Assembly: GCA_002269645.1 (NCBI GenBank)
Contig: NIVC01000981.1
Location: forward strand, 62,001-126,000
Source of the DNA: Macrostomum lignano
Lineage: Eukaryota
Length of the DNA stretch: 64,000 bases
Direction of reading: 5' to 3'
Position 1 is the first letter of the stretch; every line of letters begins with the position of its first letter. Shown piece after piece: positions 20,023-64,000 of this stretch. Made by a program: the position numbers and the translations under genes. Under the pieces are notes generated by a model. It had not been told where the DNA came from, did not search any database, and saw only the letters and a list, made by a program, of their open reading frames with translations.

Positions 20023-21023
20023 TGGGCACTGCGGTGACCGGGCTGTCCGCAGCCGTAGCAGATTGTAGTCTTCGCTGGCGAGCTGTTCTGCTGTTGGTCA
20101 CGCTGCACCAGGTGATCAAGCAGTCGCTGCTGCTTCTCGATCAAGTCGGTTAGAGTTAGCAAGGCTTGGGCGGTGACGTCGGGCTTCGGGTCGCCGTCCT
20201 GCTCCCCGTCCAACATCCTAACCGGGGGTTGAGCAGATCGCTGCGCCAATTCTTTGGCGCCTTCTAGTCGTCGTAGCTCTCGAATCGCAGCAAGAAGATT
20301 GTTCGGGCGAACCCAGTACAACCGTTCGCGCAGGTCTGGAGTCGTCCGGATACCAGCAAGGAATTGATCAGCAATCTCCTTCTCGCGGTCTTCAGGATGC
20401 ATTCGAGGATACGCACGTTCACCAAGAGTTCTCAGGGCGTCAGCAAACTCTTCTGCTGACTCATTCTTGCCTTGTTGACGACGCCTCAACAGCTCTCTAT
20501 ACTCATCAGCACCACCATGACGGGCAAATCGCTCAATCAGACGTTGCTTGACCTCCTCGTAGCTGGCGAGACGCGGAAGATTCATACCAAGCAGGGCAGG
20601 ATACGCAGTAGCCAAATCAAGACTCGCAATGAGGTGTTGCTTCATCTCGAACGGGTCGACGATGCGCTCCATCTCGCAACGCTGCTCGAACGCGGCAAGC
20701 CAGACATGAATGTCCTGACTTGGAGTATACTTCACAATCTTAACTTGTTTACTCACAGGCCGCTCCATCTGCTGCTGCAGAGCTGCCATCATGGTCCTCT
20801 CGTCCTGGTGCGTGATGTTCCGGCCGATGTTGTCCAGGCCTTGCAGAAGCTCGTCTGGCGGGTCGTCGGACACGTCGCTTCTGGCACCTCGCCTCGGCGT
20901 CGGCTGCTGACCAAAGTCGTTGATCGCTGCTGCTGCTGCGGCGTCCGCTGCCGCAGGCCTCGAACTGCTGATGTGCTGATCCAGCCGGCTGCTGCACCGG
21001 CTCTCGTCTCGTTCGTTGAACAT
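19854..21023 (-). CDS. gag: gypsy Gag (capsid-like region + CCHC zinc knuckle)
   Basis: First ATG at 21023; CYGCGQPGHRSAQC knuckle; overlaps pol in the -1 frame. Confidence 0.93.
   Translation of the reverse strand: MFNERDESRCSSRLDQHISSSRPAAADAAAAAAINDFGQQPTPRRGARSDVSDDPPDELLQGLDNIGRNITHQDERTMMAALQQQMERPVSKQVKIVKYTPSQDIHVWLAAFEQRCEMERIVDPFEMKQHLIASLDLATAYPALLGMNLPRLASYEEVKQRLIERFARHGGADEYRELLRRRQQGKNESAEEFADALRTLGERAYPRMHPEDREKEIADQFLAGIRTTPDLRERLYWVRPNNLLAAIRELRRLEGAKELAQRSAQPPVRMLDGEQDGDPKPDVTAQALLTLTDLIEKQQRLLDHLVQRDQQQNSSPAKTTICYGCGQPGHRSAQCPMRQNQGNGQAESDNGTALREVQAQATWQTPRGHQKKRMSAVQAPMPSPTVTRQ
19959..20001 (-). promoter_or_regulatory. Programmed -1 ribosomal frameshift signal (G GGA AAC + stem-loop)
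   Basis: Heptamer GGGAAAC (19995-20001) is in the gag frame. After a 6-nt spacer comes GCGGAG-AGCG...CGCC-CTCCGC (19959-19988). pol lies in the -1 frame. Confidence 0.8.
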
Positions 21024-21094
21024 GTTGAACTCGTAGTAGTTACTGGCCGATGTCGTTCTCGAAAGAGCGGTTGGCTTGGGTGTGTCGTAGTCGG

Positions 21095-21112
21095 ATCCCA
21101 CCGCTGCCACCA
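21095..21112 (-). promoter_or_regulatory. Primer binding site complementary to the 3' end of tRNA-Leu
   Basis: TGGTGGCAGCGGTGGGAT lies 1 nt from the 5' LTR and complements ...ATCCCACCGCTGCCACCA, the conserved tRNA-Leu(AAG/TAG) 3' end. Confidence 0.88.
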
Positions 21113-21113
21113 G

Positions 21114-22236
21114 TGAAATAGATAGCGTTTTTCTCGGGGTGGCCTGGTAGGTCTTTGAATCCCACCGCTGCCACCAGTGAAATAGAATGGTTTTCTCGGG
21201 GTGGCCTGGTAGGTCTTTGAATCCCACCGCTGCCACCAATGAAGTACAATGAGGTTTCTTCCCGGTTTAGGCCCTTGCGGATTACCTTCAGACTCGGGCC
21301 TCTTCAGTGGGAAGTTCTCTCAACTTTCTCAGTAGCGTAGGTAGTGCTGCCACCAGTTCCTTCAGGTCTCGGCCTTCGATGAGGTGAGCTTCCCGTCGGA
21401 ACGAAACAAACAAGTCAACGAACTCAGCACAGCGTGCAGATTTGCAGATTAATGAACAAGGCGTCCTGATCAGCAGATCCCCGCCGGGCTCAGGGGTGAC
21501 TGGGAAGGCAGTGTTAGCCTCCCTTAGGCTTGGGCTTTAGTGGGGTCTCAGTCAGACCAGTACAAACGGATTCAGTACGCAAAGGGCACTTAGTTAGACA
21601 CTGACGCACACGGGTTCTTAGTGAATTCTCCGCAGATAAGAAGCCAAAATCCTTGACGGAAACAAGGGGAGAGGGGTCCTATTTATAGCCGGGAAACACC
21701 CACGCACAAGACCTCGTGACTTGTTCTATTTTTAGAACTGACGTCACTTGAGGTCTCGAGGCAGGGTCTCAGTGCGCGCAAGACCTCGTGACTCGTTCTA
21801 TTTTTAGAACTGACGTCACTTGAGGTCTCCGGCCAGAGTACACGCGGCTGTGACTCAGTTGCTATTTTTAGCAACATGAGTCACTCCTCTCCTTAGAGAA
21901 GGGAGGGTTCCGAAAGCACGTGATTCTCCCGGTAAACAGGGCCAACGAGTGCAGTAAACATGTTTACTGCACTTTAGGACTCGAAGAACGCAGAGTCTGT
22001 CATGTGACTTGCTCACATGACAGAGGAAAACGGGACGGGAACGAAACAGAGAAAGCCCACAGCAGAGAAGCTGAGGGCTGAGAACAGAGACGCAGAAGGG
22101 CAGAACAGGCCAAGGGCAGCAACAGACGGGCCAAGGGGGGTGGGAAGCTGACCAGCGGCAGACAGCAACCCAGGGCGAGGGCGAGGGAGACTGCTGACAA
22201 AGTGGGACGCCTAACATCAACTAGCGGATCACTACA
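21114..22236 (-). repeat. 5' LTR (1123 bp) with TATA box and U3 enhancer repeats
   Basis: TATAAATA at 21680-21687 (minus strand); a duplicated U3 block containing TGACGTCA; two internal PBS copies at 21159-21176 and 21221-21238. Confidence 0.95.
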
Positions 22237-26993: not shown

Positions 26994-29020
26994 ATGACAA
27001 GGCAATTGAGGCGACAAGCAAATAAGGATTTGCTGGGCTTGTTCATGGAAGGAGAACAAGAAGCTTTGGAAGACATCGCACTGCAAGAGAAAAAAAGAAA
27101 AGTATTCGAAGCAGATGATTCTGGGAGAGTCGCCGGTTTCATCGCTTCGGAGTCCTCTGTAGCAGAAGTCAATGAAGGTACGGATCCAGATCTTGACAAC
27201 GACAATGGCAGCTATCCTGATTTTGACGAGTTCGCGCGAGTTTGCAGCGATGAAGATGAGGAGATTGACAAGAAAGAGGATGACCGCTCTTTAGAAGATA
27301 AAATATTCGCCTTGCTGGTAGTCTACTTTTCTTGTTTCAACCTAAGTCGTGGATCTAAAAAATTCCTTGTTGATGGTCTAAGAGACATAGGCTTGCCTGC
27401 GCCGAAGTCTGTCAACTCTATTGAGGCCGTCATCAATGCTGGCGATCCAACGGAAAAATTGGAGCCCATGGGAAAAGGCCATTTTCGCTACATTTCGATT
27501 CTGAAAAATCTAGAACTAATGTTTCGCAAAAACCAGCTGCACATGAAGCCAGAATATCTACAACACGATAGTGAAACTGAGAAGGTTTACAAAATTGAAG
27601 CCATCGTTAATTTTGACGGCTTGCCTTTGTACCGAGCAAGCCACTTCGGTCTTTGGCCCATACTTATGTCTATTCCCAGCATATTCAGCAGACCTTTTCC
27701 AGTAGCCGTATGGGCTGGTTGTGGCAAGCCACCTCTGAATGATTATCTTCGACAATTTTGCGACGAGGCTAAACGTTTTCTTACGGGTCCAATAAAAATT
27801 ATCGAAAATTTAAGCATCAGCTTCTCGACTATCCGATTTGTTTGCGATGCGCCTGCTCGAGCCTGGGTCTCAGTAACTCAAGGGCACATGTCGTACGTCG
27901 GTTGCATGTACTGCAGGGCTACTGGACCTTATACCGACAACAGAGTAACATTTTCAACGAGCGTCGGGGAGTCTCGTAGCAGCCAACAATACCGAGAGGG
28001 AAAGGAGTCTAACCAGGAAAATAAAAAATCGCTCTATCGCCCCTTCTAAATTTGCCTAACATTAGTTTTGTCGATGCTTTTCCCCCTGACTACCAGCATG
28101 CCGTATGCCTTGGAGTCACAAGGAAGCTATTTTACCTATTTTTCGACAAATCTAATGGCAAGAAGTGTCTCGTCTATCCCGGTCCGATGAGCCTATTGGG
28201 CGACCGAATTACTATGGCTGCCGGTTGGACACCTTCAAACTTTCAACGAAGACCCCGGAAAATCGACTTGGAACTGAAGCACATGAAGGCTACTGAATTC
28301 AGACAGTACTTGCTGTACCTAGGACCTGTCCTCTTCAAAGGCATTTTAAATGAAGAAAGGTATAACCACTTTCTTTACCTCCATTTCGCCATTTACGCAT
28401 ACTCCAACGAAAGGTACTCCAAGTGGTGGACGCAGGCAAAAACTTGCATTGAAGTTTTTGTTGAACGGGCTGCCCACCTTTACGGCCAGAAGTTTATAAG
28501 TTTCAATCTTCACACTATTCTTCATTTGGATGAGTTTGTCCGAAAGCTAGGCAGTTTAAACAACTTTTCGACTTTCCCTTTCGAAAACTTTCTTGGATCT
28601 GTAAAGCGCCGCGTAAAGGTGACAAGGCACATGGCAGCGCATTCAGTTAAGCAGGTGCTCAGAGTTCGCGATCTTCTGTTGAATGAGCAGCGAATTCCAC
28701 CGTTGAAATTCAGCACAAAGCGAGGTGATAATTGTTGCATAATCGACAAAGTATGCGTCCTAATCGAAGCTGTAAGTGAAGCTAATCAAGTCACTGGCAG
28801 GATTTTACACCCAGTTGACAACATCTACGCCAACCCATATCCATCTTTGCGTCTGGGAATCGGCTTGTACAGGATGACATCTGGTGTTCTAACTGGCACA
28901 CCTGAGCGAAAGTGCTGGATTTTGCCTGCGAATCTGCTTGCCAATCTTGCTGGAGCGGACAGGGATCCAGCAAGCCATTTTTTTGTCATTCCTCTGACAG
29001 GTGACTCCGAGGAGGCCTGA
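26994..29020 (+). CDS. EnSpm/CACTA-type transposase, one frameshift at ~28025
   Basis: Motifs NFDGLPL, CDAPARA, GH..Y.GC..C, PPDYQHAVCLG, KATEFRQYLLY, FNLHTILHL and STFPFEN. One extra A in the A6 run at ~28024-28029 joins ORFs 26994-28049 and 28052-29020 (…KKIALSPLLNLP…). Confidence 0.92.
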
Positions 29021-36900: not shown

Positions 36901-39900
36901 ATCGCCATTTCATTTCTAATGAAAGTCATTCATTTGTGAGGTCGTCATTTCATTTGTGAGATCGCCATTTCATTTCTAATGAAAGTCATTCTTTTGTAAG
37001 GTCGCCATTTCATCTGTGAGATCGCCATTTCATTTGTGAGGTCGCCATTTCATTTGTGAGGTCGCCATTTCATTTGTGAGGTCGCCATTTCATTTGTGAA
37101 CGTTGTATCGCACGAGTATCGACGAATCACACGTGTTCGTCATCAGATTTCATCGCTGATTGTTTATTGAAGAGAGGGTGCCAGGCTTTTGTCCAACATA
37201 ATCAGCTTTGCCAAGTGACAAGTGACGTTATTTACAGTCTGTTAACGCTTCAAGTGAGATTTATCACGTAGTTTTAACCGTGTTTCTGAGTTCATTGAGC
37301 CTGAGCCGTATTAAAGACGTTTAGTATAGGTAGATAGATCAACGGTTTGTACTTTCCAGAAGTACACTCAAGAGTCGTTTAAGCAGTAGAGTTTAGGACG
37401 TCTGCAACACGTAGTAAGTGGCATTTTTTCGAACTAATAATCCAACTTTGATGTCGCTAAAGCTAAACTCAATTGGCGCGAATTAGTCTTGCACTGTCCT
37501 CTTGGTTTGCTAGCTAAGACGAACTTTAACATCCAATGAAGTTGATTCTATTGATTCTGATCAGCAAAGCGAAACTCTGATTGGCTGTTGCTTCAAACTG
37601 AAAAGACATGATTTAAACTGCTGCCGCACATCCTTGCTTCATTATCTAAAAACAAGTTGGATTCAGTCCTTTGCTAAAGTCTACAATTCGAACCAAAAAT
37701 GATTGACAACGCGAGTGTAGCAGGTCTTGATGAAAATAATGTCACAGGTGCTGAGCTGGACAACTTTGATTCTCTGGAGATTAAGATCGCCGACATCTTC
37801 TTTCTTATTGTCGGAATCTGCGTCGGAGTCTGCGGAAACCTGCTCATGATCCTCTCCATAACGCTCTTTAAGCAGCTCAAGTCAGCCACCAACATTCTGG
37901 TGGTGAACATCGGCATAGCCGATCTGCTCGTGTGCTCATACTCGATCCCAGCCACCCTGGCTAACCGCATCGCTGACAGCAATGTCTTCAACGACGTCAC
38001 TTGTCGCGTGAACGCCTACGCTCTGTTCTCAGCCGCCGGAGTGTCTAACTTCAGCTTCACACTGATTGCGGTAACTCGGAACCTGTACGTCATGCGCAGA
38101 GTCGTGTACCAGAGGAACTTCACGGACTCAAAAATGATTGCATACTGCGTAGCCTGCTGGATATTCTGGTTTCTCGTCAGCGGTCTGTTCTGGTGGCAAG
38201 GAGGATTCGGATACATTCCTGAGGCGTTCATCTGCTTCTACTATGACAATGACTCGCCGTTTACATTGAGCTTCCTGCTCACCTTGCTGGGAGTGGCGAT
38301 TCCGTCACTTCTCGCTGCTGGTTGCTACGTCAATCTATTCTACAAGCTGTTCCGTATACGCAATCAGTCCGAGAACTCAGTCTCTGGTGATACAAGCGAT
38401 ACATCCGTGAGCAAGGAATGGAAAGCTGTGGCTCCAGTGCTAGCCGCTTTCATAACCTTCAACCTGTGCTGGGGTCCCTACAGCATCCACGTGTACATCG
38501 ATAAGTTTTTTGCGCACGTGGGCGCGATTCCGCACAAGGTTTTCACCTGGCTCGCTGTGTTCAACTCGATGCTGAACCCGATCATCTATGGTGTGCTGAA
38601 CCCGAATTTTCGTCGCTGTTACATGCGTCTGATTCGCGTTGCGTTCGCTTGTCGAGCCTGCAAGCGGTCCGCAGCCGTGACGCCAGCTGACAGCGGTGGT
38701 ACAAGCTAGTGATTAGTTTTCGTTCTTGGATACAAATCTTGACAAAAGAAATTTTCTGATGAAATTTAAGATCTTTTTTGATCTCTCGAAAAGATTGTAG
38801 CCACAATGCAGCATAAATGCAAAAAAAACAAAAAAATATTGTGGCAAATAAATCTCCCTGACGGCAGTCGATTCCTTGCAAGCAATTTTGTAGTCGTTTT
38901 GTTTTCCTCTTTGAATATCTTCAACGGTGCAGCAATTTTGCAAATAAATATTGCATCGGTAATCGGAAACCTTGAGAGTATTTATTTAAAATGGCTATAC
39001 ATTAGCGTTTGAGTCCTAGCGTAGCGGAGTCTTTGAAGTATTGTTCAATCTAATAGTTTTTTTACCGCTTTGCGCAAAAATCAAGGATTAAATTGCAATC
39101 GCACTGCGATTTCTTGATGATTTAATTTCGACAAAACAAAGGATACAATTGCTGTTAAGCCCCTTCATGTTGATCGTTTTTTGTCTTAGTCAACGTCTTA
39201 TTGAGTTCGACAACATCATCGAAGTCCGATTGAAAATACTAGATCTTTGTTAACAACCTGTTAACAGCCTGTCCTAACCGATTTACTGAATTTAGTGCCA
39301 AAAAACTGAAAGTCAGTCAATCACAGTGCCATTTGGTATCCTGTCTCGTGACTCAGACCGTTAACTTGAAATTCAGGTTGCTAGCTGGAATTAGGTAAAA
39401 AGTAAAAAAAAACAATACCGACATCTTTACCCTTACCCACAGATACTATATAATATAATAGATACTATATAGTATCTGTGCCCTTACCCTTTACATTGCT
39501 GAGTCTCTTTGATCTACAGAAGGTGTAGCAAAGGTCTGCAGACTCCATACTTACAGATTACTCAAATTTGACAATCAATAAAAATTTTGAAGTCCTAAAA
39601 ATCCTAGTATTATAATTATTGATAGTTAAAGTGAAATATGAATTACATACAATGTGGAATTTAAATTAGATGACATCGAGCTGGGAAAATTGAGTGCCAA
39701 AGTCAGTTTAAATTCAGAATGCTCAGTTTTATACAAATTTTCAATTGAATAAAATACTTTAAATAAAAATTTTTAAGCAGAGTCACTACAAGGGCGTTCA
39801 GAAAGTTCGGCATGGGCTGATGCACTTTTGCTCTAGCTGTAGCCTTCGCCCTTGCCAGTCTCATTCCAGCGGCAGTATGGCACCTTTACCCCTTTCTTGC

Positions 39901-46589: not shown

Positions 46590-49500
46590 ATGCCGAAGTT
46601 TCATCAGCAGGCCGGCTCCCTAGTGGTGCTAGATTCAGACTTTAGAAGTGCACGTCGGAGATCATATTTGAACGAGTTCAACAATGGCCTCGTGTTCAGT
46701 CATCGGCCTTTACGCGACTATCAGGTGTTCTCAGTGCGAATTGTGGACAAAACCTTAGCTTGGAGCGGCTCCATAGAGATTGGCGTCACCGCCTGCAATC
46801 CGAGCACGCTGACTCCTCTACCGTGCAGCGCTTCCAACCTGACCAGGTCAGCCTGGGTCATGTCCGGCTTCTCCGTCCTCCGCGACGGCTTCCCCAGCTG
46901 CGAGAACTACGGCCTCGATTTGGAATCATTGAAAGAGGACGACACAGTTGGCGTTATGCGAACCTCGGACGGGGATTTGCACTTTTACGTTAACGGCGTC
47001 GACTTGGGCGTGGCGGCTAGGAACGTGCCCTCTCCAGTGTGGGCCGTTGTGGATCTGTACGGCAAGTGCGTTCGCGTTGTCATAGTAAACGACGACACCG
47101 ATTTACTTGACGATGAAGATGATATTGATGTCGAGCAGAGAGTATCGACTGTTCCAGCTGAATCTGCTGGCTCGCCAGTGCTGAGCCTGCCGCAGTCAAG
47201 GAGCAGTCTGGATTTAGACAGTGTCGAACCCGGCACCGCAGCTGCTCAGCAGAACACTCCGCTTAGCTTGGCATTGGCCATGTCGCAGCTGCAGCTGGAT
47301 CACATGACCAATCTCAGCAGGATTAGCGCCGCGCTTGACATGGCAGGCGGCGCCAACGGGAGCGCCAGTCGTCTGGAACGTCCGGAACGTCCCAATACGT
47401 TGAATGTGGAACCGACGTCGGCGGCGGCTGCTGCTGCTGCTGCTGCTTGTGGTGGTGCCGCGGCTCTTGTTGATGAAGATATCGACGAAGACCCCAATGA
47501 AGGCGGTAGTCTAGCAGCGGCGGCTGATGTCGGTCACGATGCTCTTCTGGACGACGCTGAGGAGCTGACATTCCATCGGAAATGCGGCACCCTAGTCCGG
47601 TTGAGCACAGATCGTCGGGTTGCCGAACGGCGCAAACCGTTCGACGAGTTTAACAACGGCGTAGTGGTTAGCAGCAGGCCGTTGCGGGATAACGAACTAT
47701 TCAAAATTAGAATTGACAAGCTGGTGCAGAAATGGAGCGGATCTATTGAAGTCGGGATTACTAGTCACAATCCCGAACGATTGACATTGCCGTCAACTAT
47801 GACGCAGTTGCGGTCTGGCACTATTATAATGAGCGGCGCTGGCATACTAATGAATGGCAAGGGCACACACAGAGAGTATGGCAAGGTTAGCCTGGACTGT
47901 TTGAAAGTTGGCGACCGAATTGGATTGAGAATTTCTCCGGAGGGCGACCTGCGGTACTACATTAACGGGCGGGACCAGGTGCGCTGCGTCCTTCACTTGT
48001 TTTTGTTATCAGTTATTGGCTTTGGTCCTTTGACGTTGATTCTTTTGACCTTGGTGAATTTGACCTTGGTGAATTTGACCTTGGTTGTTTGACCTTGGTT
48101 CTTTTGACCTTGGTTATTTGACCTTGGTTCTTTTGACCTTGGTTATTTGACCTTGGTTGTTTGACCTTGGTTATTTGACCTTGGCTCTTTGACCTTGGTT
48201 ATTTGACCTGGGTTCTTTTGACCTTGGTTATTTGACCTTGGTTCTTTTGACCTTGGTTATTTGACATTGGCTCTGAACTTGACTCTTTGACTTATGTAAT
48301 TGACCTTGGTAATGTGACCTTGGTTATTTGACCTTGGCTCTTTGACATTGGTCCTTAGGTCATATGACTTTGGTGCTTTCATATTTCTCATTTGACGTGG
48401 GTTTCTAAAATCGTCTTTAACCATCGCCTTGTGCACGCACGCAGGGCGTTGCCGCCAGTCGCGTCTCCCGGCCCCAGTGGGCAGTGGTGGACCTCTACGG
48501 CATGTCCGTCAAAGTCACGCTGGTGTCGCGCGGGCTGCTCAGCGGCCGGAGCGTCAGCCAGGCTGCCCGACAATCCTGCGGGCCTCAGCTGTCGGCGCTG
48601 CCGTCCTCCTCGGCGCCACCGCTATTGTCAACTTTCTCCGAGGACGAAGACCAGCGCGAGGAGACGGAGAAGCTGACCTTCAGTCCGGCAGCTCCGTTCG
48701 GGGTGCAGATCAGCGACGGCGCCACCAGGGCCAGCGGCCAGGGCGAGCTGCTCAGCAACCGGCCGCTGAGACTGGGGGAGCCGTTCGCTCTGCTGGTGGT
48801 CAGCGGCTCCGTGCAGGTGAGTCTGTCTCAGTTGCCTGGGCTACCAGCCTCTCAGATCCTCAGTTTCCTAGGCAACCAGCCTCTCAGATCCTCAGTTTCC
48901 TAGGCAACCAGCCTCTCAGATCCTCAGTTTCCTAGGCAACCAGTCTCTCAGATCCTCAGTTTCCTAGGCAACCAGTCTCTCAGATCCTCAGTTGCTGGGC
49001 CAGCCTCCCAGATCCTCAGTTGCTGGGCCACCAGCCTCTCAGATCCTCAGTTGCCTGGGCCACCAGTCTCTCAGATCCTCAGTTTCCTAGGCAACCAGTC
49101 TCTCAAATCCTCAGTTGCTGGGCCACCAGCCTCCCAGATCCTCAGTTGCCTGGGCCACCAGCCTCTCAGATCCTCAGTTGCCTGGGCCACCAGCCTCTCA
49201 GATCCTCAGTTGCCAGGGCAACCAGCCTCCCAGATCCTCAGTTGCTGGGCCACCAGCCTCAGATCCTCAGTTGCCTGGGCCACCAGCCTCTCAGATCCTC
49301 AGTTTCCTGGGCAACCAGTCTCTCAAATCCTCAGTTGCCTGTGCCACCAGCCTCTCAGATCCTCAGTTGCCTGGGCCACCAGCCTCTCAGATCCTTTGTT
49401 TCCTGGGCAACCAGTCTCTCAAATCCTCAGTTTCCTAGGCAACCAGTCTCTCAGATCCTCAGTTTCCTAGGCAACCAGTCTCTCAGATCCTCAGTTGCTG

Positions 49501-51277
49501 GGCCAGCCTCCCAGATCCTCAGTTGCTGGGCCACCAGCCTCTCAGATCCTCAGTTGCCAGGGCCACCAGCCTCTCAGATCCTCAGTTTCCTAGGCAACCA
49601 GCCTCTCAGATCCTCAGTTGCCAGGGCCACCAGCCTCTCAGATCCTCAGTTTCCTAGGCAACCAGCCTCTCAGATCCTCAGTTACCTGAAGCCGTTGTTC
49701 CTGCTGCACAAAAGCCAATCAGGTCAACTCTCTCTCCCGTTTTATGCAGGTAAGCGTGACCACTGGCACCGGACCGCCCAGCGGTCGCAGCTGGAGTCTG
49801 TCCGAGCCTGTCCGAGCCGGGCCGGGCACCAGCCTGTCCGTTTGCGTTCGTCGCGACGGCGTCCGGTTTGCTCGCAACGACGAAGATTTGGGCGCGGCGC
49901 CGAATTCCGCCGGCGTGTCGGCGCCGCTGTACGCCCGGGTGCTGCTGGACGGCGAGGCGCTGATCCGCCTGGACGCCTGCTACCTGCACTACTTCCACGA
50001 GCGGCACGGCCGCAATGTGGCTCTGCTGAATAATAAGAGAACTGCCAGGTGAGACACTTGCTTAGTGGTGGTGTTGTCCTCTGCTGATTGTTGTGCATTT
50101 CTATGTGCTTTTTCGGTCGGCAACTGAGGATCTGGGAGGCTGGCCCAGCAACTGAGGATCTGGGAGGCTGGCCCAGCAACTGAGGATCCGGGAGGCTGGC
50201 CCAGCAACTGAGGATCTGGGAGGCTGGCCCAGCAACTGAGGATCCGGGAGGCTGGCCCAGCAACTGAGGATCTGGGAGGCTGGCCCAGCAACTGAGGATT
50301 TGGGAGGCTGACCCAGCAGATGAGGATCTGGGAGGCTGGCCCAGCAACTGAGGATCTGGGAGGCTGGCCCAGCAACTGAGGATCTGGGAGGCTGGCCCAG
50401 CAACTAAGAATCTGGGAGGCTGGCCCAGCAACTGAGGATCTGGGAGGCTGGCCCAGCAACTGAGGATCTGGGAGGCTGGCCCAGCTGGGATCTACCAAAT
50501 TAGGCTATCCTGGACTCGCGGCATCAGTATTCCCGACTGGAAACTCTCTCCCCAACCGCAGGCGCACCAACCCATCGGCTGAGTTCAACGACGCGGTCTG
50601 CCTGTCTGCCCGGCCACTGCTGGAAGATGAGATATTCGAAATTCGCATCGACCACCTGGTGGACCGGTGGAGCGGGTCCCTGGAGGCCGGTGTGATCGCG
50701 GCTCCGCCCAGCCAGTTCCCCACCACCCTGACAGACATCAGGCAGGACTGCTGGCTGCTGTCGGGCTCCACGGTGATGCGGGACGGCGCCACGGTGCGCA
50801 CAGGCTACCCGCTGGACCTGGACGACCCGGCCGTGGTTCGGCGTGGCGACCGGATCGGCATCTGCGTGAAGGCCTCCGGCGAGTTGCACTTCTATCACAA
50901 CGATGCCGATATGGGCCCGGCGTGTTCGGCAGTGCCGCTCGGAGTCTACGCTGTTGTCGACCTCTACGGCCAGTGCGCCGCCATCAGCCTGTGCCCCGCG
51001 CCGCCGCCGCTGCCGCACGCGTCGTTCTACGCTTCCGCCGACGCTGAAGCCGCCGCCGCCGCAGCTGCCGCGGTGGCCGCCGAAGAAATTGACGACCCTG
51101 CAGCGTCTGGCGGCCCTGCGCCTGCGGCTGCTGCTGAGGACTCGGCAGATGAGCAGGGCTTCAGTGCGAGCGCTGCGGCCGAGAGCAAGTCGTCGGCTGC
51201 GAGGAATGAGACTGCTCCGTCTGGTGCTGGCTTTGGGGCGTTCAGCGACCGGGTGCAGGTGTGTCTGTCTGTCTGTG

Positions 51278-51338
<61 letters not shown>

Positions 51339-51363
51339 GTCTGTCTGTGTCTGTCTGTCTGTG

Positions 51364-51410
<47 letters not shown>

Positions 51411-51411
51411 G

Positions 51412-51458
<47 letters not shown>

Positions 51459-51475
51459 GTGTCTGTCTGTCTGTG

Positions 51476-51508
<33 letters not shown>

Positions 51509-51553
51509 TTCTGTCTGTCTGTGTGTCTGTCTGTCTGTCTGTCTGTCTGTCTT

Positions 51554-51584
<31 letters not shown>

Positions 51585-54500
51585 GTCTGTCTCTCTGTCT
51601 ACCTGCCTGTCTGTGTGTCCGTCTGTCTGCAGTTGTTGCTACCACTGCCTTACCTGACGCTATCAATCTCCCTCGCCATTCTCAACCGCCCAGCTGCACG
51701 ACCGCATCCGGGCCACCGGCTCCGGCCTGGTGTTCAGCTCGCGCCCGTTGAAGCCCGACCACCTGTTCGAGGTGAGCATCGACCAGCTGGCCTCGGGTAC
51801 TCGCGTTCCGGCCAGCTCGGGGACGCCGATCCTGGGCCTGAGCGAAGGCCTGCCCCGCACCAGCTCCAGCTGCGTAGACATTCGCCAGGCTCGCCGACGC
51901 AGCTGGCTGGTCGGTCAGGACGGCGCCTATCGCTGCTCGGACGCCGGTCAGCTGACTGTCCTACAGCTGGCCTACGCTCGCTGCCTTCGCCAGCTGGCGG
52001 TTGGCGACCGACTGGCGATTCACTATGCATCCGATGGCGGCGTCAGCCTGCTGGTCAACGAGACCAGCTTAGGCCGGTTCGCCGACACGGTGCCGAGGAA
52101 CTGCTTCGCCTTCGTGCAGTTCGGCTCGCCCACCTGTCCGGCTGTGGAGGAGCTCCGGTTCCTGCGGCAGGCTCCGTGCCGCCTGCCCCGGCTGACCCAT
52201 CGGCCCGGACAGCCGCTCGAGTCCTGCCTGGACGCCACGGTCACCACTAACGGCGACGAGGCCGACGACGCCGGCAACGTCGACGGCGAAGACAATGCTG
52301 ACCGCGGCGAGGCTGACAAGCAGCGGGCTGTAGCCGACAGCGACAAAGACGTCGACGAGACTGAAGCTACTTCAGGGACGGGTAACGTCAATGACGATGA
52401 TGATGTTGTTGTTGACACAGACGGCAGTGAGCAGAAGCAGCAACAGCAACAGCAGCAAGGCTTTGTTGTCGCCGGAGCTAACTGCGCTGTATCGTCGGAT
52501 CGGCTTACCGCCCGACGTCGGGTCGGTTTCTGTCACGCTGTGGCCGCGTGTGCCGATCCGTTGGAACCGGCCGGCCGGCCCGTCTTGTTTCAGCTGGACT
52601 CCTTAACGGCGGCTTCGGCATCGGGCCCAGCCGGTTCGGTTAGTCTGGGCCTGCTACGGCGCCGGCCGAGTCATCGGGATCAGCTGGCGGCTACGCTGGT
52701 TAATCAGCGAGGCGAGCCCGGGTTGCTGCTGTGCGTTGTTGGCGACTCCGTCTACGGGTCTGGACTAAAGCTGGTGAGGACTGACTCTGCCTTGATGTAC
52801 ACAAGAGAACGTATAAAATCTTTCCTCTAATGTACATACAGGACCCTAGAATATCTCTGCCCCAAAGTAGTGTACAGGACCCTAAAATTTTTCTGCCCCA
52901 ATGTACATACAGGACCTAGAATATCTCTGCCCCAATGCACAGACAGGCGGCCCTAGAATATCTCTGCCCCAATGTACACACAGGACCCTAGAACATCTCT
53001 GCCCCAATGTACACACAAGACCCTAGAATATCTCTGCCCCAATTTACACACAGGACCCTAGAATATCTCTGCCCCAAAGTAGTGTACAGGACCCTAGAAT
53101 ATCTCTGCCCCAAAGTAGTGTACAGGACCCTAGAATATCTCTGCCCCAAAGTAGTGTACAGGACCCTAGAATATCTCTGCCCCAAAGTAGTGTACAGGAC
53201 CCTAGAATATCTCTGCCCCAAAGTAGTGTACAGGACCCTAAAATTTTAACCCCAATGTACATACAGGACCCTATAATATTTGCCCTAATGTACGTACAGG
53301 ACCCTAGAATATTTGCCCTAATGTACATACAGGACCCTAGAATTTTTCTGCCCCAATGTACACACAGGACTCTAGAATATCTTTTCCCCGGTGTAAACAG
53401 GAGACCGTAGAATATCTCTGCCCCAATGTACACAGGAGACCCTAGACTATCTCTGCCCCAATGTACACAAGGCAGCCTAGAATATCTCTTCCCCAACGTA
53501 AACAGGAGACCGTATAATATCTATCCTCCAATTTACACAAGACACCCTATAAAATCTCTGCCCCATGTGCACACAGGAGACACTTAGAATATCTCTGTCC
53601 TAATGTACACGCAGGACCCTAGAATATCTCTGCCCTAATGTAGACACAGGACTCTGCTCTACCCCAAAGTAACCTGAATTCTTGCAGCTCCAGTCGGGCC
53701 TGTCCGTTGACCTGGACACCCTGTCCGAAGGTGACACAGTTGGCCTCATGCTGGACGCGGAACGTCGTCCCCGCCTGATTGGTTCGAATGGCCGACCCTC
53801 GGAGCCGATCGGCGAGCCAGTAGGCCTTCGACCAGTCTATCCGGCCATCGACATCTACGGCCGCTGCAGTCAGGCATCCATCGTCGCTACGCCGGATTCT
53901 GCCAGCTCCGGCTCCGGCGTCTTGTCGACTAATCCGACCTCCGTTCCGACAGCGCCGATGGATCCGACAAAAATTGCAATAACGTCAGTCGCGACGCTGG
54001 CGTCGACATCGACAATTTGTTCGCAGCGACGTCGAGCGCAGCGTTGGCTCGAGCGACTGGCTCTGCCGGCGGCGCTTCTGCGGCCGAAATACGACTCGTG
54101 TGCCTGCCGGTCGTGCGCCAGCGGTGTCGGCGGCGTCGCTGCATCGAAATCGTTAGAGACAGCCAAATCTGCCGATGACGGGGCCGGCTGGACCAAATTC
54201 GGCCTGCGCGTGTCGACATCCTCGCCGCACATTCTGTCGCAACAGGTTCGGCTCTCTTTTAAGCATTTTGTCCTCAATGTCGGAGATTAGTGACACAATT
54301 ACCGGCACCATGCAATCACCGACACAATCACCGATACACACCGACACACCGACACACCGACACAATCACCGATACACACCGACACACCGACACAATTACT
54401 GATATACCTATCAACACGCCGGCACACTCACCGACAAAATGACCGGCACACTTACCGACACAATCATCGACACAAGCACCGACACAATCACCGGCACACT

Positions 54501-56811: not shown

Positions 56812-57358
56812 GGGGTGGGTGAAGGAGTGAGGTGGGTGAAGGAGTGAGGTGGGTGAAGGAGTGAGGTGGGTGAAGGAGTGAAGTGGGTGAAGGAGTGAGG
56901 TGTGTGAAGGAGTGAGGTGGGTGAAGGAGTGAGGTGTGTGAAGGAGTGAGGTGTGTGAAGGAGTGAGGTGTGTGAAGGAGTGAGGTGGGTGAAGGAGTGA
57001 GGTGTGTGAAGGAGTGAGGTGGGTGAAGGAGTGAGGTGGGTGAAGGAGTGAGGTAGGTGAAGGAGTGAGGTAGGTGAAGGAGTGAGGTGGGTGAAGGAAT
57101 GAGGTGGGTGAAGGAGTGAGGTGGGTGAAGGAGTGAGGTGGGTGAAGGAGTGAGGTGGGTGAAGGAGTGAGGTGGGTGAAGGAGTGAGGTGGGTGAAGGA
57201 GTGAGGTGGGTGAAGGAGTGAGGTGGGTGAAGGAGTGAGGTGGGTGAAGGAGTGAGTTGGGTGAAGGAGTGACGTGGGGGAAGGAGTGAGGTGGGTGAAG
57301 GAGTGAGGTGGGGGAAGAAGTGGGATGGGTAAAGGAGTGGGGTGGGTGAAGGAATGGG
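56812..57358. repeat. 17-bp G-rich minisatellite (GTGGGTGAAGGAGTGAG)
   Basis: About 31 units. Confidence 0.96.
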
Positions 57359-57540: not shown

Positions 57541-60500
57541 TCAATTTCCGAGTCTCTCCAGTCCGAAATGAGTCATCCGGTCGAAGGAGTTCAGGCAGCA
57601 GGTTGACGAACTGCTGGAGCATTTGAAATCCACCGCGTCATATTTCGCTCGCAAGTAGCGAACAGAGTTGACGTAGCAACGGGTGTATTTATTGCTGTCG
57701 CTTGATTTGGAAATGTTTCTGGGATAGCAAGCGGCCCACACTTTATTATTCACCCGGATGGCCAGTTGCTCCTCTTGACCCTTCCAACAAGAGGATACCT
57801 GCCATATGTGAGACGTGTTGATATCGGGGTATAAAATAGAACTTTTATATGGTAGTAAGTAGCCTGAAGTACTTTTAGGTTTAGAGGAGGAAGGGTGTAT
57901 AGCGGGGTGAGGTGGGTGCATGGTGGAGTGGTGGGTGCATTGTGGAGTGAGGTGGGTGTATAGTGGAGTGGGTGGGTGTATAGTGGAGTGAGGTGGGTGC
58001 ATAGTGGAGTGAGGTGGGTGTATAGTGGAGTGAGGTGGGTGTATAGTGGAGTGAGGTGGGTGCACGGTGGAGTGGGTTGGGTGCATAGTGGAGTGAGGTG
58101 GGTGTATAGTGGAATGGGTGGGTGTATAGTGGAGTGGGTGGGTGTATAGTGGAGTGAGGTGGGTGTATAGTGGAGTGAGGTGGGTGCACGGTGGAGTGGG
58201 TTGGGTGCATAGTGGAGTGAGGTGGGTGTATAGTGGAATGGGTGGGTGTATAGTGGAGTGAGGTGGGTGTATAGCGGAGTGATACGGGTGTATAGTGGAG
58301 TGAGGTGGGTGTATAGTGGAGTGGGTGGGTGTATAGTGGAGTGAGGTGGGTGTATAGTGGAGTGAGGTGAGTGAAAGGTGGAGTGAGGTGAGTGCATGGT
58401 GGAGTGAGGTGTACATGTAAATATTTCCGAGTCTGTAGGGCAGTCCATCTCATCTCACCATCATGTATATCCTGTAGTAGCCATCCCTAGCAACCTGGAT
58501 CCGGTTGGAGTTGCCAATCAGTTTGTACAGAGGACCACGGATGCCGTTTTCACAGTTGGCAGAGTGCTTAGACCAGTCGCTGCACGTCAGGGGGCCGATT
58601 GAGTTCACTATGCGATTGCGGATGAGTTGGAGATCTTTGTTTGGTTGCAACTGTTCTCATGATGTGCAGAAAAGCAATATGTAATGAACCTCGTCACTCT
58701 TCATTAGGCACTCTTGTCACACCCTATACAGTATAGCCCTATAGGTACTCTTGACACCCTACATTATAGGCACTCTTGTGCACACTACTGTCCCTCTAGA
58801 AAGCATTGATATGACCTGGCCTTAAACACCAGCAAAGCATTTCATTTCTCTACTAAAATTCTGGTCAAAGACAGATTGCAATCAGTGCAACAATTTACTT
58901 AAAAATTTATAGAATTTTGCACACCAGATTTTCTGAAGCTGAACTTGCTAAGAAGATTTTCAACTTCGCTTAAAAAGAAACGACAAAATAAGTTCAAATC
59001 GTTAGAATACGCCCAAGTCAATATACTTGAAATATGACTATGAATTGATTTTAGGGCATAAAAGCTATTCATATGTACATGCAACCATGCTCACCCCCCG
59101 AAAAATAGGTGCTTTGATCTTGGCGGTGACATTCGGTGTCCTCGCTTGACTGACAGATCCGGCTTCTGCCGATTGACAGACTGAGCCAAGCCTGCGGGTG
59201 CGGCATTCCATTCTGATTGACAACTGCATGCTCACTTCTCTGCCCTCTCCCCTTCTCTCCCTCTCTCTCCTTCTCTGCCCTCTCCCCTTCTCTCCCTCTA
59301 TCTCCTTCTCTGCCCTCTCCCCTTCTCTCCCTCTATCTCCTCCTCTGTCCTCTCCCCTTCTCTCCCTCTATCTCCTTCTCTGCCCTCTCCCCTTCTCTCC
59401 CTCTCTCTCCTTCTCTGCCCTCTCCCCTTCTCTCCCTCTATCTCCTTCTCTGCCCTCTCCCCTTCTCTCCCTCTATCTCCTTCTCTGCCCTCTCCCCTTC
59501 TCTCCCTCTATCTCCTTCTCTGTCCTCTCCCCCTCTCTCCCTCTCTCTCCTTCTCTCCCTCTCCCCCTCTCTCCCTCTCTCTCCCCCCTCTACTCTCCCC
59601 CTCTCTTCCTCTCCCCCTCTCTTCCTCTCCCCCTCTCTTCCTCTCCCCTCTATTCCTCTCCCCTCTCTTCCTCTCCCCCTCTCTTTCTCTCCCCCTCGCT
59701 TCCTCTACCCTCTCTTCCTCTACCCCTCTCTCCTCTCCCCTCTCTCCTCTCCCCCTCTCTTCCTCTCCCCCTCGCTTCCCTTACCCTCTCTTCCTCTACC
59801 CCTCTCTCCTCTCCCCTCTCTCCTCTCCCCCTCTCTTCCTCTCCCCCTCGCTTCCTCTACCCTCTCTTCCTCTACCCCTCTCTCCTCTCCCCTCTCTCCC
59901 TCTCCCCTCTCTCCCTCTCCCCCTCTCTCCTCTCCCCTCTCCCCTACTCTCTTTCTCCCCCACTCTCCCTTTCCCCCACTCTCCCTCTCTCCCACTCTCC
60001 CTCTCTCTAACTCCTCCTCTCCTCTCCCCTCTCTTCCTCGCAACGCCTGTCTCTCCCTAGCTCCCTCCCCCAAGCAAATCAGACTAAATACCTGTTCACT
60101 TTCAGCTTCATCGCTGGGCTCCCCGCCTGCAGCAGTCAGGGCAGCGAAGTCAGACGAGAACATGGCCAGGACAACCATGGTTGCCAGTAGGTTGGCCATG
60201 AACACGATGAAGGATGTGGTATTGATGATTGACAGCTGGCGACGCTCCTGCGAATTTCGAGCACTGCTGCTTCGAGACCTTCCAGACTTTCGAGTTCCCG
60301 ACGATTGTCTCGACGAAGGAGTCCGGGCACCTCGTTTATGCTGCTGGCGCTGACTAGACTGCTGTTTTATCTGCTGCTGCTCCTGGTGTTGCTGCTTCTG
60401 CCGTCTGGCAAAGAACGACGAAGACCTCTGCGAACCTCTACTCGAGGTCATCCGAGTTTTTGCCTGTCGATTCTGCTCGAACCGGCGGCCATGTGACGTA

Positions 60501-60670
60501 GAGGCTTCTGGAATTGGCGATGACGACAAGAGAATTGAAGGCGGAAGTTCATTGCTGGTACCTGGGGCAGGCAGCTGCGGTGACGGCTGCGGCTGTTCAC
60601 CGGTCAGCGATACTATGGTGAAGTATACATTGTCCTGCTCTTTGCTGAACTTTACTGTATTATTAGCCAT
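57541..60670 (-). CDS. TNF-superfamily ligand-like type II membrane protein (~385 aa), gene A
   Basis: Exons 60670-60092, 59223-59095 (less certain), 58650-58459 and 57798-57541, all phase 0. Long basic cytoplasmic N-terminus; TM (SFIVFMANLLATMVVLAMF); RTRR furin-like site; THD-like strands RIQVARDGYYRIYMM|VSS, LAIRVNNKVWAACY, TRCYVNSVRYL, THFGLERL. Confidence 0.72.
57900..58412. repeat. ~21-bp G-rich minisatellite (GTATAGTGGAGTGAGGTGGGT), TNF-A intron
   Basis: Direct inspection; related to the 17-bp array at 56812. Confidence 0.92.
59232..60052. repeat. Pure polypyrimidine/polypurine tract (35-bp unit decaying into CT-rich sequence), TNF-A intron
   Basis: About 820 bp almost free of purines on the + strand. 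Confidence 0.95.
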
Positions 60671-62214: not shown

Positions 62215-64000
62215 TTAAACCATTCTCTCCAAGCTTACAGTAAAGTTATTTTTGCAGTTATATCTAGAAAACTGCAACTGCAGCCAACTATTGACCGTTA
62301 GTGGACGAACTATGCTGAAACTGCACACAATTAAATCGCGGCTTGACTGACCAATCCATTTTCGCATGCACTCGTGCAGTTTTTGGGACTCCTGATGCTT
62401 CGGCGTCGAATATTGAACTCTCGATTGAACAGTAGTTACGCTGTTCTTGCAACCAAAATTTACCTGGAAATATAAGGTCTTTTTAATTAATGACTAAATG
62501 TAAATCAGATAATAATCAAATAAGATCTGCTACTTTCAGTGAGGTTGAGCTTCTACTCACATTGAAATTGATGCGGAACAGACCACCCTGTTTGATGAGT
62601 ATTTTGCTTCTTTGGCCGTTTTCGTCCTCTTCAATCTTGACCATCTTAATAGACGGGTCGATTGCGGCGAAGTTCACAGCTGAAGTTGGGGCATTAGCAG
62701 GTGAGCAATCAATCTTTGTTTGGCTTAGCAGCGAGTTTGTACTGAAAATAGTTTGGCTTCAGTTGAAAAAGTTGCTTGTAGTTCCCGGCTGTCGGGCTTC
62801 GTGTTTTGCAAAGTGCAATTGGGCATCTCATATTTTATACCTTCATTATATCTACCTCCGCCCTTAATTCTACGCTCGTAAGTCCACAATCTACCTCCGC
62901 CCTCTACCTTCACCCTTCTAACTACACCCCCACTATCTCCGCCCCCTCCATCTCCGCTCTCTACCTCCGCCCTTTACTTCCGCCCTTCTAACTACACCCT
63001 CTCTATCTCCGCCCCTCTATACCTCTGTCCTCTACCCCGCCTTCTACATCTACCTTCACCCTCTATCTTCACTCCTCTACCTTCGCACTTCAAGTAAGTG
63101 TGCTATAAACAGTGAATTGAATGACTAAATATAATTTTTGTGCACGGGTATAATTCAGACTGGCAAAGCAGCGGCTTCATGTGTTTATATCAAACATTGA
63201 CGGTTGACGAAAGACCAGTTTCGTTAAACAATTTGCTGGCTAAATGTACGCCAGAAAATATGGAAGTTCAGGCCAAGAAAATAATTGTATACTATAGACG
63301 TAATTGCTGAGTAAGCAATTCATATGCCCGGCAAATGGACTTACAGCCAAGACCCGTGAGGCTTGGAGACTCGAATTTCGACGACAAGTTGATCCACTCT
63401 TGTGATACTCGTACCTGCGCCATGTTGGTGTGGGGGAGTTTTCTACTGAATAGTTAGCTAACTAATGAATCAGGAACAACACATGATTAGCTTTAGTTAA
63501 CTTCGTCTGTCTATATAATTATCCTAATTTTCGTCCACTAAATATTCCTTTCATTCTTCCCTGAATTTTTCAATTTTCCATGACGAATCTATCCCTTCAT
63601 TACTATGAATCTGCCGTAGACTAAATCGTAGTAAATTTTGCAGAATTTTCTGCCCAGAATCTACAGAATTTTCTGCCAAGAATCTACAGAATTTTCTGCC
63701 AAGAATCTACAGAATTTTCTGCCCAGAATCTACAGAATTTTCTGCCAAGAATCTAACAGAATTTTCTGCCAAGAATCTACAGAATTTTCTGCCCAGAATC
63801 TACAGAATTTTCTGCCAAGAATCTCAGAATTTATTATCTAGAATTTGCAGAATTTTTAGCTGAAAATATATTTTCTTTCGCCTAAAATCCCATTCTTTTT
63901 ACCATTTTCAGTGTCAGCTCACCAGTCCATTATCCTTTAACAGCCGCAGCGGGCCAAAAAGCACTACGGTCAATGTCAGACCACAGGCCAACAGCAAATG
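62215..64000 (-). CDS. Second TNF-superfamily ligand-like gene (gene B), 5' end beyond the window
   Basis: Last exon 62463-62215 reads VNFGCKNSVTTVQSRVQY…LHECMRKW…LIVCSFSIVRPLTVNSWLQLQF…FTVSLERMV*. The penultimate exon ends at 62561 (…SKILIKQGGLFRINFN|) and starts at 62679 or 62741. Exon 63414-63345 has a GTAAGT donor. A TM-like exon runs from the window end to 63923 (LLLACGLTLTVVLFGPL). The last intron is at the same position and phase as in gene A. Confidence 0.62.
62840..63085. repeat. Degenerate C-rich repeat (CTCTACCTCCGCCC)
   Basis: Direct inspection. Confidence 0.75.
63635..63830. repeat. 23-bp minisatellite (AGAATTTTCTGCCAAGAATCTAC)
   Basis: About 8 units in the first visible intron of TNF-like gene B. 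Confidence 0.93.

What the first reader, a model, noticed from the sequence alone, without database searches (positions are those of the whole stretch)
62215..64000. Hidden second TNF-like ligand gene forms a tandem, highly diverged pair
Seen: it is absent from the ORF track because its exons are short and lack ATGs. It has KILIKQGGLFRINFN|VNF (gene A: RIQVARDGYYRIYMM|VSS) with the intron at the identical codon and phase, CSFSIVRPL (CYVNSVRYL), a terminal SLERM* (GLERLGN*) and a TM exon at the window edge. Identity to gene A is low, so the duplication is ancient. One phase-consistent model (63923|63414-63345|62679-62561|62463) puts the THD almost directly on the membrane with no furin site, unlike gene A. 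Inference: a previously unannotated invertebrate TNF-ligand cluster pairing a sheddable ligand with a tethered one, possibly hetero-trimerising as LT-alpha/LT-beta do.
Basis: partly seen in the sequence, partly recalled or inferred. Interest (0 to 1): 0.72.

Follow-up and report, generated by a model that had tools for sequence, protein, structure and literature searches.

The report
Diverged second TNF-family ligand gene
Next to a clear TNF-family cytokine gene in this animal genome lies a second, very diverged copy that still looks like a TNF-type domain, which is an ordinary tandem duplication; the proposed shed-versus-tethered pairing has no support.

Summary
The quoted peptides, exon coordinates, GT/AG sites and reading phases are all in the sequence. 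The last residues are SLERMV*, not SLERM*.

Neither gene matches Pfam TNF, PDB chains or any protein in the large collections. A and B are not significantly alike in direct comparison.

I built TNF-homology-domain (THD) profiles from a published tunicate alignment.
- **Gene A (57541-60670, minus strand):** a bona fide TNF-superfamily ligand. It scores 21.6 bits (P 1e-8) against 81 sequences and 29.5 bits (P 3e-11) against the compact cysteine-pair groups.
- **Gene B (spliced model):** 12.9 bits (P 4e-6). None of 10,000 shuffles reached this. It also beats all 215,295 possible two-exon combinations elsewhere in the window.
- **Shared features:** B keeps the invariant Trp, Gly and both Cys. Its intron lies at the same profile position and phase as gene A's.
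- **Losses in B:** two core Tyr and the Phe-Gly of the last strand.

So B is most likely a THD-coding tandem paralogue. Whether it is expressed is unknown.

The transmembrane exon at the window edge is not shown to belong to it, and an in-frame ATG at 63423 is an alternative start. Gene A has no furin motif in its stalk, so "sheddable versus tethered" fails. Heterotrimers remain speculation.

The parts
62215..62463 (-). Gene B last exon, including the TAA stop at 62215-62217. Encodes VNFGCKNS...FTVSLERMV, which covers the end of strand C through strand H of a THD-like domain and includes both conserved Cys.
   Evidence: Acceptor TTTCCAG|GT with a 92-codon open frame. Aligns to TNFSF profile positions about 65-132. 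The Cys pair sits in invariant columns.
62561..62679 (-). Gene B exon 3: (S)VNFAAIDPSIKMVKIEEDENGQRSKILIKQGGLFRINFN. It covers strands B'-B-C with the invariant Gly. The donor is GTGAGT, phase 0.
   Evidence: The open frame ranks 14 of 1419 against the profile.
63345..63414 (-). Gene B putative exon 2 (VRVSQEWINLSSKFESPSLTGLG), carrying the Trp that MAFFT places in the invariant Trp column. Alternatively it is the first coding exon, starting at ATG 63423 (MAQVRVSQEW...).
   Evidence: It is the only phase-compatible candidate of 58 with a perfect GTAAGT donor. Its acceptor has only 5 of 12 pyrimidines, and ACCAACATGG lies just upstream. Trp column. It adds no profile score of its own.
63923..64000 (-). 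Possible gene B upstream exon with a hydrophobic TM-like stretch (LLLACGLTLTVVLFGPL), cut by the window edge. Donor GTGAGC, phase 0.
   Evidence: It is the only open frame on this strand at the edge. Its link to B is inferred from phase only.
60092..60670 (-). Gene A exon 1: ATG, a 151-aa Ser/Arg/Gln-rich cytoplasmic tail, the TM segment (aa 152-171, nt 60158-60217) and the start of the stalk.
58459..58650 (-). Gene A exon 2: the first half of the THD, ending ...GYYRIYMM at a phase-0 GTGAGA donor.
   Evidence: It is the top hit of 1419 six-frame ORFs against every full-family profile version.
57541..57798 (-). Gene A exon 3: the second half of the THD with the Cys pair, SVRYL, and THFGLERLGN followed by the stop.
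   Evidence: The true junction 58459|57798 is the best of 230,883 GT-AG combinations.

Best explanation
The minus strand of 62215-63414 encodes a highly diverged TNF homology domain. It may continue through the TM-like exon at 63923-64000 and beyond the window. It is a tandem paralogue of the neighbouring gene A (57541-60670).

Gene A is a type II membrane TNF-superfamily ligand of the EDA/APRIL/BAFF/Eiger kind, with the cysteine pair that links strands E and F. Such ligands fold as a jelly-roll, assemble into trimers, and cluster TNF receptors to signal through TRAF adaptors.

Gene B arose by local duplication of such a gene. It kept the domain length, the Trp, the Gly of strand C, both Cys, the strand-F pattern (V-R-x-L), and the intron inside strand C. 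It has replaced two core Tyr and the Phe-Gly of the last strand.

Shown here: profile-level homology, the shared intron position, and intact frames and splice sites. Inferred: the fold, trimer formation, membrane anchoring, expression and receptor binding.
For: **Gene A against TNFSF THD profiles** built from the published tunicate alignment:
- 9.1, 11.7, 21.1 and 21.6 bits as the profile grew from 23 to 81 sequences.
- 29.5 bits, P 2.6e-11, against the Cys-pair groups, over A residues 42-144.
- hhalign probability 75% over the full length.

**Gene B spliced model against the same profiles:**
- 5.7, 7.4, 11.0 and 12.9 bits (P 4.3e-6). The match is collinear over B residues 41-128.
- No shuffle out of 10,000 reached 12.9 bits.
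- The B exon-4 frame ranks 2 of 1419 window ORFs, just behind gene A.
- No two-exon combination outside the A and B loci beats it.
- hhalign gives a full-length collinear alignment, P 0.006.

**Independent alignment:** MAFFT with 16 tunicate ligands has four invariant columns (W, G, C, C), and B has all four.

**Family of the joint profile:** that 18-sequence alignment (A, B and the 16 tunicate ligands) finds EDA (1e-21), BAFF/APRIL (1e-14) and Eiger (4e-14) in the PDB.

**Gene structure:** same strand, 1.5 kb apart. The intron is at the same profile position and phase. A exon 2 has 64 codons and B exons 2+3 have 63.
Against: - There is no Pfam PF00229 hit for A or B, even at E 10.
- There is no PDB or protein-collection hit for either gene alone.
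- Direct A-versus-B similarity is at chance level: BLASTP finds no collinear hit, the permutation p is 0.06 and 0.4 per exon, and tblastn gives E 9.
- B scores only 3.1 bits (P 0.004; 3.7% of shuffles) against the subgroup profile that fits A best.
- B exon 4 alone scores 5.0 bits (1.5% of shuffles).
- Part of the ORF-level rank comes from intronic residues TLYFQ, which mimic strand C.
- hhalign probability for B is only 6%.
- Codon usage is unremarkable, at the 88th percentile of null ORFs.
- B lacks Tyr62 and the Phe-Gly that all 16 reference ligands have.
- There is no transcript evidence and no fold evidence. The exon-only model had pLDDT 46.
Confidence: 0.72

Rival explanations
1. B is TNFSF-derived but is a decaying, unexpressed relic of the duplication (a pseudogene whose frames happen to be still open), not a working ligand gene. 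This overlaps the best explanation on origin and differs only on present function.
For: B alone lacks Tyr62 and the Phe-Gly found in all 16 reference ligands, and Tyr59 is Phe. Its profile score is weak compared with A. The exon-2 acceptor is poor. Codon usage is not distinctive.
Against: There are no in-frame stops or frameshifts across about 145 codons. All splice sites are canonical, and three of the donors are near-perfect. The invariant W, G, C and C are kept, which is not expected after long neutral decay at 17% identity to A.
Confidence: 0.25
2. There is no gene. Two adjacent open frames of 80 and 92 codons with chance splice-like sites happen to carry TNF-like motifs.
For: Open frames of this length are common in the window (179 null ORFs of 60 or more codons). 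A-versus-B similarity is at chance level. There are no homologues.
Against: The profile P is 4e-6 and no shuffle out of 10,000 reached the score. The B locus beats every one of 215,295 alternative GT-AG combinations elsewhere, and the same test recovers the true gene A junction as its best hit. The four invariant residues are present. The intron position and phase match gene A, on the same strand 1.5 kb away.
Confidence: 0.17
3. B is a real gene for a different all-beta protein, not a TNF-superfamily member. The motif matches reflect generic beta-sandwich patterns.
For: The NEURL4 NHR domain, another beta-sandwich, is the best non-TNF scorer against the profile. An early hhalign run placed GGLFRINF on strand F instead of strand C.
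Against: No Pfam family matches any local frame. With the larger profile both HMMER and hhalign give one collinear register, with both Cys aligned. The gene also sits next to a TNFSF gene and shares its intron position.
Confidence: 0.05

Closest known systems
EDA / APRIL / BAFF / TWEAK / Drosophila Eiger branch of the TNF ligand superfamily
   Same: The THD is compact, about 145-150 aa. The Cys pair sits in the positions conserved in the compact tunicate groups. The 18-sequence profile that contains those groups plus A and B finds EDA, BAFF, APRIL, Eiger and TWEAK first in the PDB. Gene A has the G-Y-Y-x-I-Y strand C, the F-G last strand, a long cytoplasmic tail and a single TM. That this Cys pair bridges strands E and F in this branch is established knowledge, not tested here.
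   Different: Neither A nor B reaches Pfam PF00229 or any single PDB chain. There is no collagen-like region as in EDA, and no furin motif in either stalk. B lacks Tyr62 and the Phe-Gly.
Tandemly duplicated TNFSF genes of invertebrates and tunicates (up to 14 per tunicate species; 23 reported in Crassostrea gigas; PMC12843592)
   Same: Two same-strand neighbours with a shared exon plan and fast sequence divergence. Frequent local duplication is the described mode of family growth (PMC12843592).
   Different: Divergence here is extreme. A and B share 17% identity and are undetectable by direct comparison. The species is unknown and has no close relative in the protein collection.
Lymphotoxin alpha / lymphotoxin beta (and APRIL/BAFF) heterotrimers
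   Same: Only the genomic picture matches: two neighbouring, diverged TNFSF genes.
   Different: Nothing here bears on co-expression or mixed trimers. In LT-alpha/LT-beta one partner is secreted through a signal peptide. Here neither a signal peptide nor a processing site was found, and B's trimer-core residues are altered.

Membership tests
TNF ligand superfamily (gene A) | TNF homology domain recognised by a family profile | tested here: met
   Scores 21.6 bits (P 9.5e-9) against the 81-sequence THD profile and 29.5 bits (P 2.6e-11) against the Cys-pair groups. No shuffle out of 10,000 reached the score. hhalign probability is 75% over the full length.
TNF ligand superfamily (gene A and gene B) | Pfam PF00229 above the gathering score | tested here: not met
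   No PF00229 line appears even at E 10, for whole models, THD-only pieces or single frames. HMMER's filters drop matches with P above about 1e-5, so this does not conflict with the custom-profile results.
TNF ligand superfamily (gene B) | TNF homology domain recognised by a family profile | tested here: inconclusive
   Scores 12.9 bits (P 4.3e-6), and no shuffle out of 10,000 reached it. It is the best locus after gene A in two window-wide null tests. Against this, it scores only 3.1 bits versus the subgroup profile, hhalign probability is 6%, and the exons were chosen for their motifs.
TNF ligand superfamily | Conserved core residues: Trp after strand A, G-x-Y-x-I/V-Y in strand C, F-G in strand H | tested here: inconclusive
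   Gene A has all of them. Gene B has W and G, but Y59 is F, Y62 is N and the F-G is absent. All 16 reference ligands have them.
EDA/APRIL/BAFF/TWEAK-type subgroup | Cysteine pair flanking the loop before strand F | tested here: met
   Both Cys columns are invariant in 18 of 18 sequences, including A (C88, C105) and B.
TNF ligand superfamily | Type II topology: N-terminal cytoplasmic tail, one TM segment, C-terminal THD | tested here: inconclusive
   Gene A has a 20-residue hydrophobic segment at aa 152-171 between a 151-aa tail and the THD (by inspection, as no TM predictor was available). Gene B has a TM-like stretch only on an edge exon whose link is unproven, and an alternative ATG at 63423 would give no TM.
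TNF ligand superfamily | Jelly-roll fold assembling into trimers | not testable with these tools
The exon-4-only model had pLDDT 46 and is uninformative.
TNF ligand superfamily | Binding to a TNF-receptor cysteine-rich domain | not testable with these tools
Furin-shed TNF ligands (e.g. EDA, APRIL, BAFF) | R-x-K/R-R or R-x-x-R in the stalk between the TM and the THD | tested here: not met
   Gene A has only RGAR at aa 113 (cytoplasmic) and RYLR at aa 304 (inside the THD). Gene B has none.
Heterotrimeric TNF ligands (LT-alpha/LT-beta type) | Co-expression and mixed trimer formation | not testable with these tools
   No expression data or complex prediction was available.

The most novel reading that the evidence does not exclude
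Gene B is an expressed, functional ligand that has given up the usual trimer-core residues (Tyr to Asn in strand C, Phe-Gly to Val-Ser in strand H). In that case it works in an unusual way, for example only in mixed trimers with gene A, or as a non-trimeric or inhibitory partner that tunes signalling by gene A.
Probability: 0.1. Interest if true: 0.55.

Novelty: new member of a known kind. Interest (0 to 1): 0.3.

Why it matters
The finding adds two very diverged members to the TNF ligand family in an animal lineage that has no close relative in the protein collections. It also shows that standard tools (Pfam, single-sequence searches) miss them, while a profile made from fast-evolving tunicate ligands finds them.

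That is useful for cataloguing immune and developmental cytokines in non-model animals. Tandem TNFSF duplicates are already well described, so it changes no general picture unless gene B turns out to work in an unusual way.

Tried and rejected
**Searches that found nothing useful**
- Pfam on whole models, THD pieces and every local frame on both strands gave nothing.
- PDB phmmer with A and B found no TNF chain.
- Word-indexed homologue searches for A and B found nothing.
- Exhaustive phmmer of the A THD against 1.84 billion representatives gave only a spurious hit to a repeat protein.
- The NEURL4 search reached at most 71% identity, so the species and its close relatives are not in the collection and the taxon stays unknown.
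- Rfam found nothing in the window.

**Structure prediction**
- The exon-4-only model had pLDDT 46 and is not usable, so no fold search was run.

**Direct A-versus-B comparisons**
- BLASTP, permutation tests and tblastn are all at chance level for the collinear register.
- A non-collinear match (A exon 2 start against B exon 4 end, z 3.9) is left unexplained.
- DNA comparison of the two loci matched only the minisatellites.

**Other tests**
- Codon-usage scoring was inconclusive.
- No further TNF-like copy was found elsewhere in the window by the six-frame or two-exon scans.
- The antisense 125-aa ORF at 62490-62867 has no family match and scores -2.4 bits against the TNF profile.

Full report
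**Setting.** The window is animal nuclear DNA. It has spliced genes, many micro- and minisatellites, and a broken Ty3/gypsy-type retroelement at 14.7-21.2 kb. It also carries an intronless rhodopsin-type GPCR at 37699-38709 and a NEURL4-like gene with several Neuralized repeats at 46.6-54.3 kb. The NEURL4 exon finds relatives at no more than 60-71% identity, and the GPCR product is not on record. The species and its close relatives are therefore absent from the protein collections, and I could not name the taxon.

**Observation.**
- Every junction has AG and GT, and the donors are GTGAGC, GTAAGT and GTGAGT.
- The quoted peptides are present. The end is SLERMV*, not SLERM*.
- Exons 3 and 4 lie in open frames of 80 and 92 codons.
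- The ATG/GTG ORFs there are only 50 and 53 aa, so they would be missing from a 60-aa ORF list.
- Gene A is a clean three-exon, all-phase-0 model: 60670-60092 | 58650-58459 | 57798-57541. It encodes 342 aa with a long Ser/Arg/Gln-rich N-terminal tail, one hydrophobic segment (aa 152-171) and a 149-aa C-terminal domain.

**Standard tools see no TNF domain.**
- Pfam gives no PF00229 line for A, B, their domains or any single frame, even at E 10.
- phmmer against PDB chains gives no TNF chain.
- The word-indexed search finds nothing for A or B.
- An exhaustive phmmer of the A domain against 1.84 billion representatives gives one spurious hit to a repeat protein.
- A and B are not significantly alike in direct comparison. 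BLASTP finds no collinear alignment. Permutation p is 0.06 for A exon 2 against B exons 2+3, and 0.4 for the last exons. In tblastn the strand-C match has E 9 and ranks twelfth among chance hits.

On these results alone the "TNF-like" label for both genes rested on short motifs.

**A profile from fast-evolving ligands changes this.** The supplement of PMC12843592 holds a curated 204-column alignment of tunicate TNFSF homology domains. I built HMMs from growing, non-redundant subsets and scored A and B with all filters off and Z = 1.

| Profile | Gene A | Gene B (spliced, 145 aa) |
|---|---|---|
| 23 sequences | 9.1 bits | 5.7 bits (P 8e-4) |
| 41 sequences | 11.7 bits | 7.4 bits |
| 63 sequences | 21.1 bits | 11.0 bits |
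| 81 sequences | 21.6 bits (P 9.5e-9) | 12.9 bits (P 4.3e-6) |
| 22 sequences, two compact Cys-pair groups | 29.5 bits (P 2.6e-11), residues 42-144 | 3.1 bits (P 0.004; 3.7% of shuffles) |

- For gene A, no shuffle out of 10,000 reaches its score. hhalign gives 75% probability over the whole domain. The subgroup match runs through the Cys pair, SVRYL and THFG. Gene A is a TNF-superfamily ligand.
- For gene B, the match is one collinear stretch (B 41-128 to profile 44-132), and no shuffle out of 10,000 reaches it. hhalign gives a full-length collinear alignment but only P 0.006 and 6% probability.
- I report all five profile versions because the choice of profile matters.

**Guarding against selection.**
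- *Six-frame scan.* Among 1419 stop-free frames of 25 aa or more, gene A exon 2 ranks first. The frame holding B exon 4 ranks second (13.0 bits, P 4e-6), and the frame holding B exon 3 ranks fourteenth. The third-best P, 5e-4, is what 1419 tests should give, so the P-values are well calibrated here.
- *Two-exon scan.* I enumerated all 230,883 phase-compatible GT-AG combinations on both strands. The best is the true gene A junction 58459|57798 (21.5 bits). All other top hits involve A or B exons. The best of the 215,295 combinations outside both loci scores 11.1 bits and is a NEURL4 repeat.
- *Caveat.* Exon 4 alone scores only 5.0 bits (1.5% of shuffles). Much of its frame's rank comes from the ten intronic codons before the acceptor (SLIKKTLYFQ), which happen to mimic strand C. 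The spliced model gets the same gain from the real end of exon 3.

**Residue-level picture.** An independent MAFFT alignment of A, B and 16 compact tunicate ligands has four invariant columns: the Trp after strand A, the Gly of strand C, and two Cys. B has all four.
- B also keeps the Ile and Val of strand C and the V-R-x-L of strand F.
- The Arg in V-R-x-L is shared with A in that motif.
- B alone lacks Tyr62 and the Phe-Gly of the last strand, and Tyr59 is Phe.
- A and B share 20 of 119 aligned positions (17%).
- The profile of this 18-sequence alignment (A, B and the 16 tunicate ligands) finds EDA (1e-21), BAFF and APRIL (1e-14), Eiger (4e-14), then TRAIL, TWEAK, CD40L and RANKL in the PDB. 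This places the pair in the EDA/APRIL/BAFF/Eiger branch. In that branch a Cys pair linking strands E and F is a known hallmark (established knowledge, not tested here).

**Gene structure.**
- In the profile-anchored alignments the phase-0 intron falls between the same two profile positions in A (YMM|V) and B (NFN|V).
- A exon 2 has 64 codons and B exons 2+3 have 63.
- The genes are 1.5 kb apart on the same strand.
- Several tunicate entries carry an X one codon further on. This may mark an exon junction there, but the paper does not define X.

**B's 5' part is uncertain.**
- Its acceptor has a poor pyrimidine tract, and an in-frame ATG in the context ACCAACATGG lies nine bases upstream.
- B may therefore start at 63423 without a TM segment, or continue to the edge exon and beyond.
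- Neither exon 2 nor the edge exon adds profile score.
- Exon 2 does supply the invariant Trp and the right domain length.

Gene A has no R-x-x-R between its TM segment and its domain. Its only such motifs are cytoplasmic (aa 113) or inside strand F (aa 304). B has none. The "sheddable ligand paired with a tethered one" therefore has no basis. Mixed trimers are possible in principle, as in LT-alpha/LT-beta or APRIL/BAFF, but nothing here tests that. B's altered core residues could equally mean relaxed constraint.

**What could not be done.** Exon 4 alone gave pLDDT 46, which is uninformative. Codon usage puts B at the 88th percentile of null ORFs, which is not decisive. DNA comparison of the loci matches only their purine-rich minisatellites. 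No related locus or transcript is available.

**Verdict.**
- Gene A is a real, very diverged TNFSF ligand gene.
- B is most likely (about 0.7) a THD-coding tandem paralogue with intact frames. About a quarter of my belief is that it is an unexpressed relic, and about 0.17 that it is chance.
- This is a new member of a known kind. Tandem TNFSF expansions are well documented in tunicates, molluscs and amphioxus (PMC12843592).
- Interest is modest. It would rise only if B proved to be expressed and to act through an unusual assembly.

Noticed in passing
window 62464-62493 (minus strand): The last ten intronic codons, in frame with B exon 4, read SLIKKTLYFQ. This resembles both the end of exon 3 (ILIKQGGLF...) and the TNF strand-C motif. 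With the minor acceptor at 62478 the profile score is even higher (14.2 bits) than with the consensus acceptor at 62463.
   Followed up: partly
window 63415-63423 (minus strand): An ATG in the context ACCAACATGG lies in frame with B exon 2, whose acceptor has a weak pyrimidine tract. This gives a possible TM-less start, MAQVRVSQEW.
   Followed up: partly
window 58590-58650 vs 62255-62350 (minus strand): There is a non-collinear similarity between the start of A exon 2 (DLQLIRNRIVNSIGPLTCSDW) and the end of B exon 4 (DLIVCSFSIVRPLTVNSW). It has z 3.9 and p about 0.003 in shuffles, which is stronger than any collinear A-B match. It is unexplained.
   Followed up: no
window 56814-57353, 57893-58411, 59235-60007, 62890-63084, 63641-63832: Minisatellites with units of 17, 21, 35, 13/70 and 23 bp lie in the introns and 3' flank of both genes. 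The arrays at 62890-63082 and 59285-60017 are the only DNA similarity between the two loci.
   Followed up: partly
window 62490-62867 (+): A 125-aa ORF antisense to B exon 3 is longer than the sense frame. It has no family match and scores -2.4 bits against the TNF profile.
   Followed up: yes
window 14703-21239 (-): Ty3/gypsy-type retroelement remains: the integrase, RNase H and reverse transcriptase domains are split over three overlapping ORFs, so pol is broken.
   Followed up: partly
window 26994-29020 (+): Two adjacent ORFs of 351 and 322 aa have no Pfam match. They may be a transposon-derived gene.
   Followed up: partly
window 37699-38709 (+): An intronless rhodopsin-family GPCR of 336 aa (7tm_1, E 3e-36). 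Its exact product is not on record in the assembly collection.
   Followed up: partly
window 46590-54290 (+): A NEURL4-like gene with several Neuralized repeats, whose introns are filled with (TCTG)n-type microsatellites. The best relatives reach only 60-71% identity. Its NHR repeat is the top non-TNF scorer against the TNF profile.
   Followed up: partly
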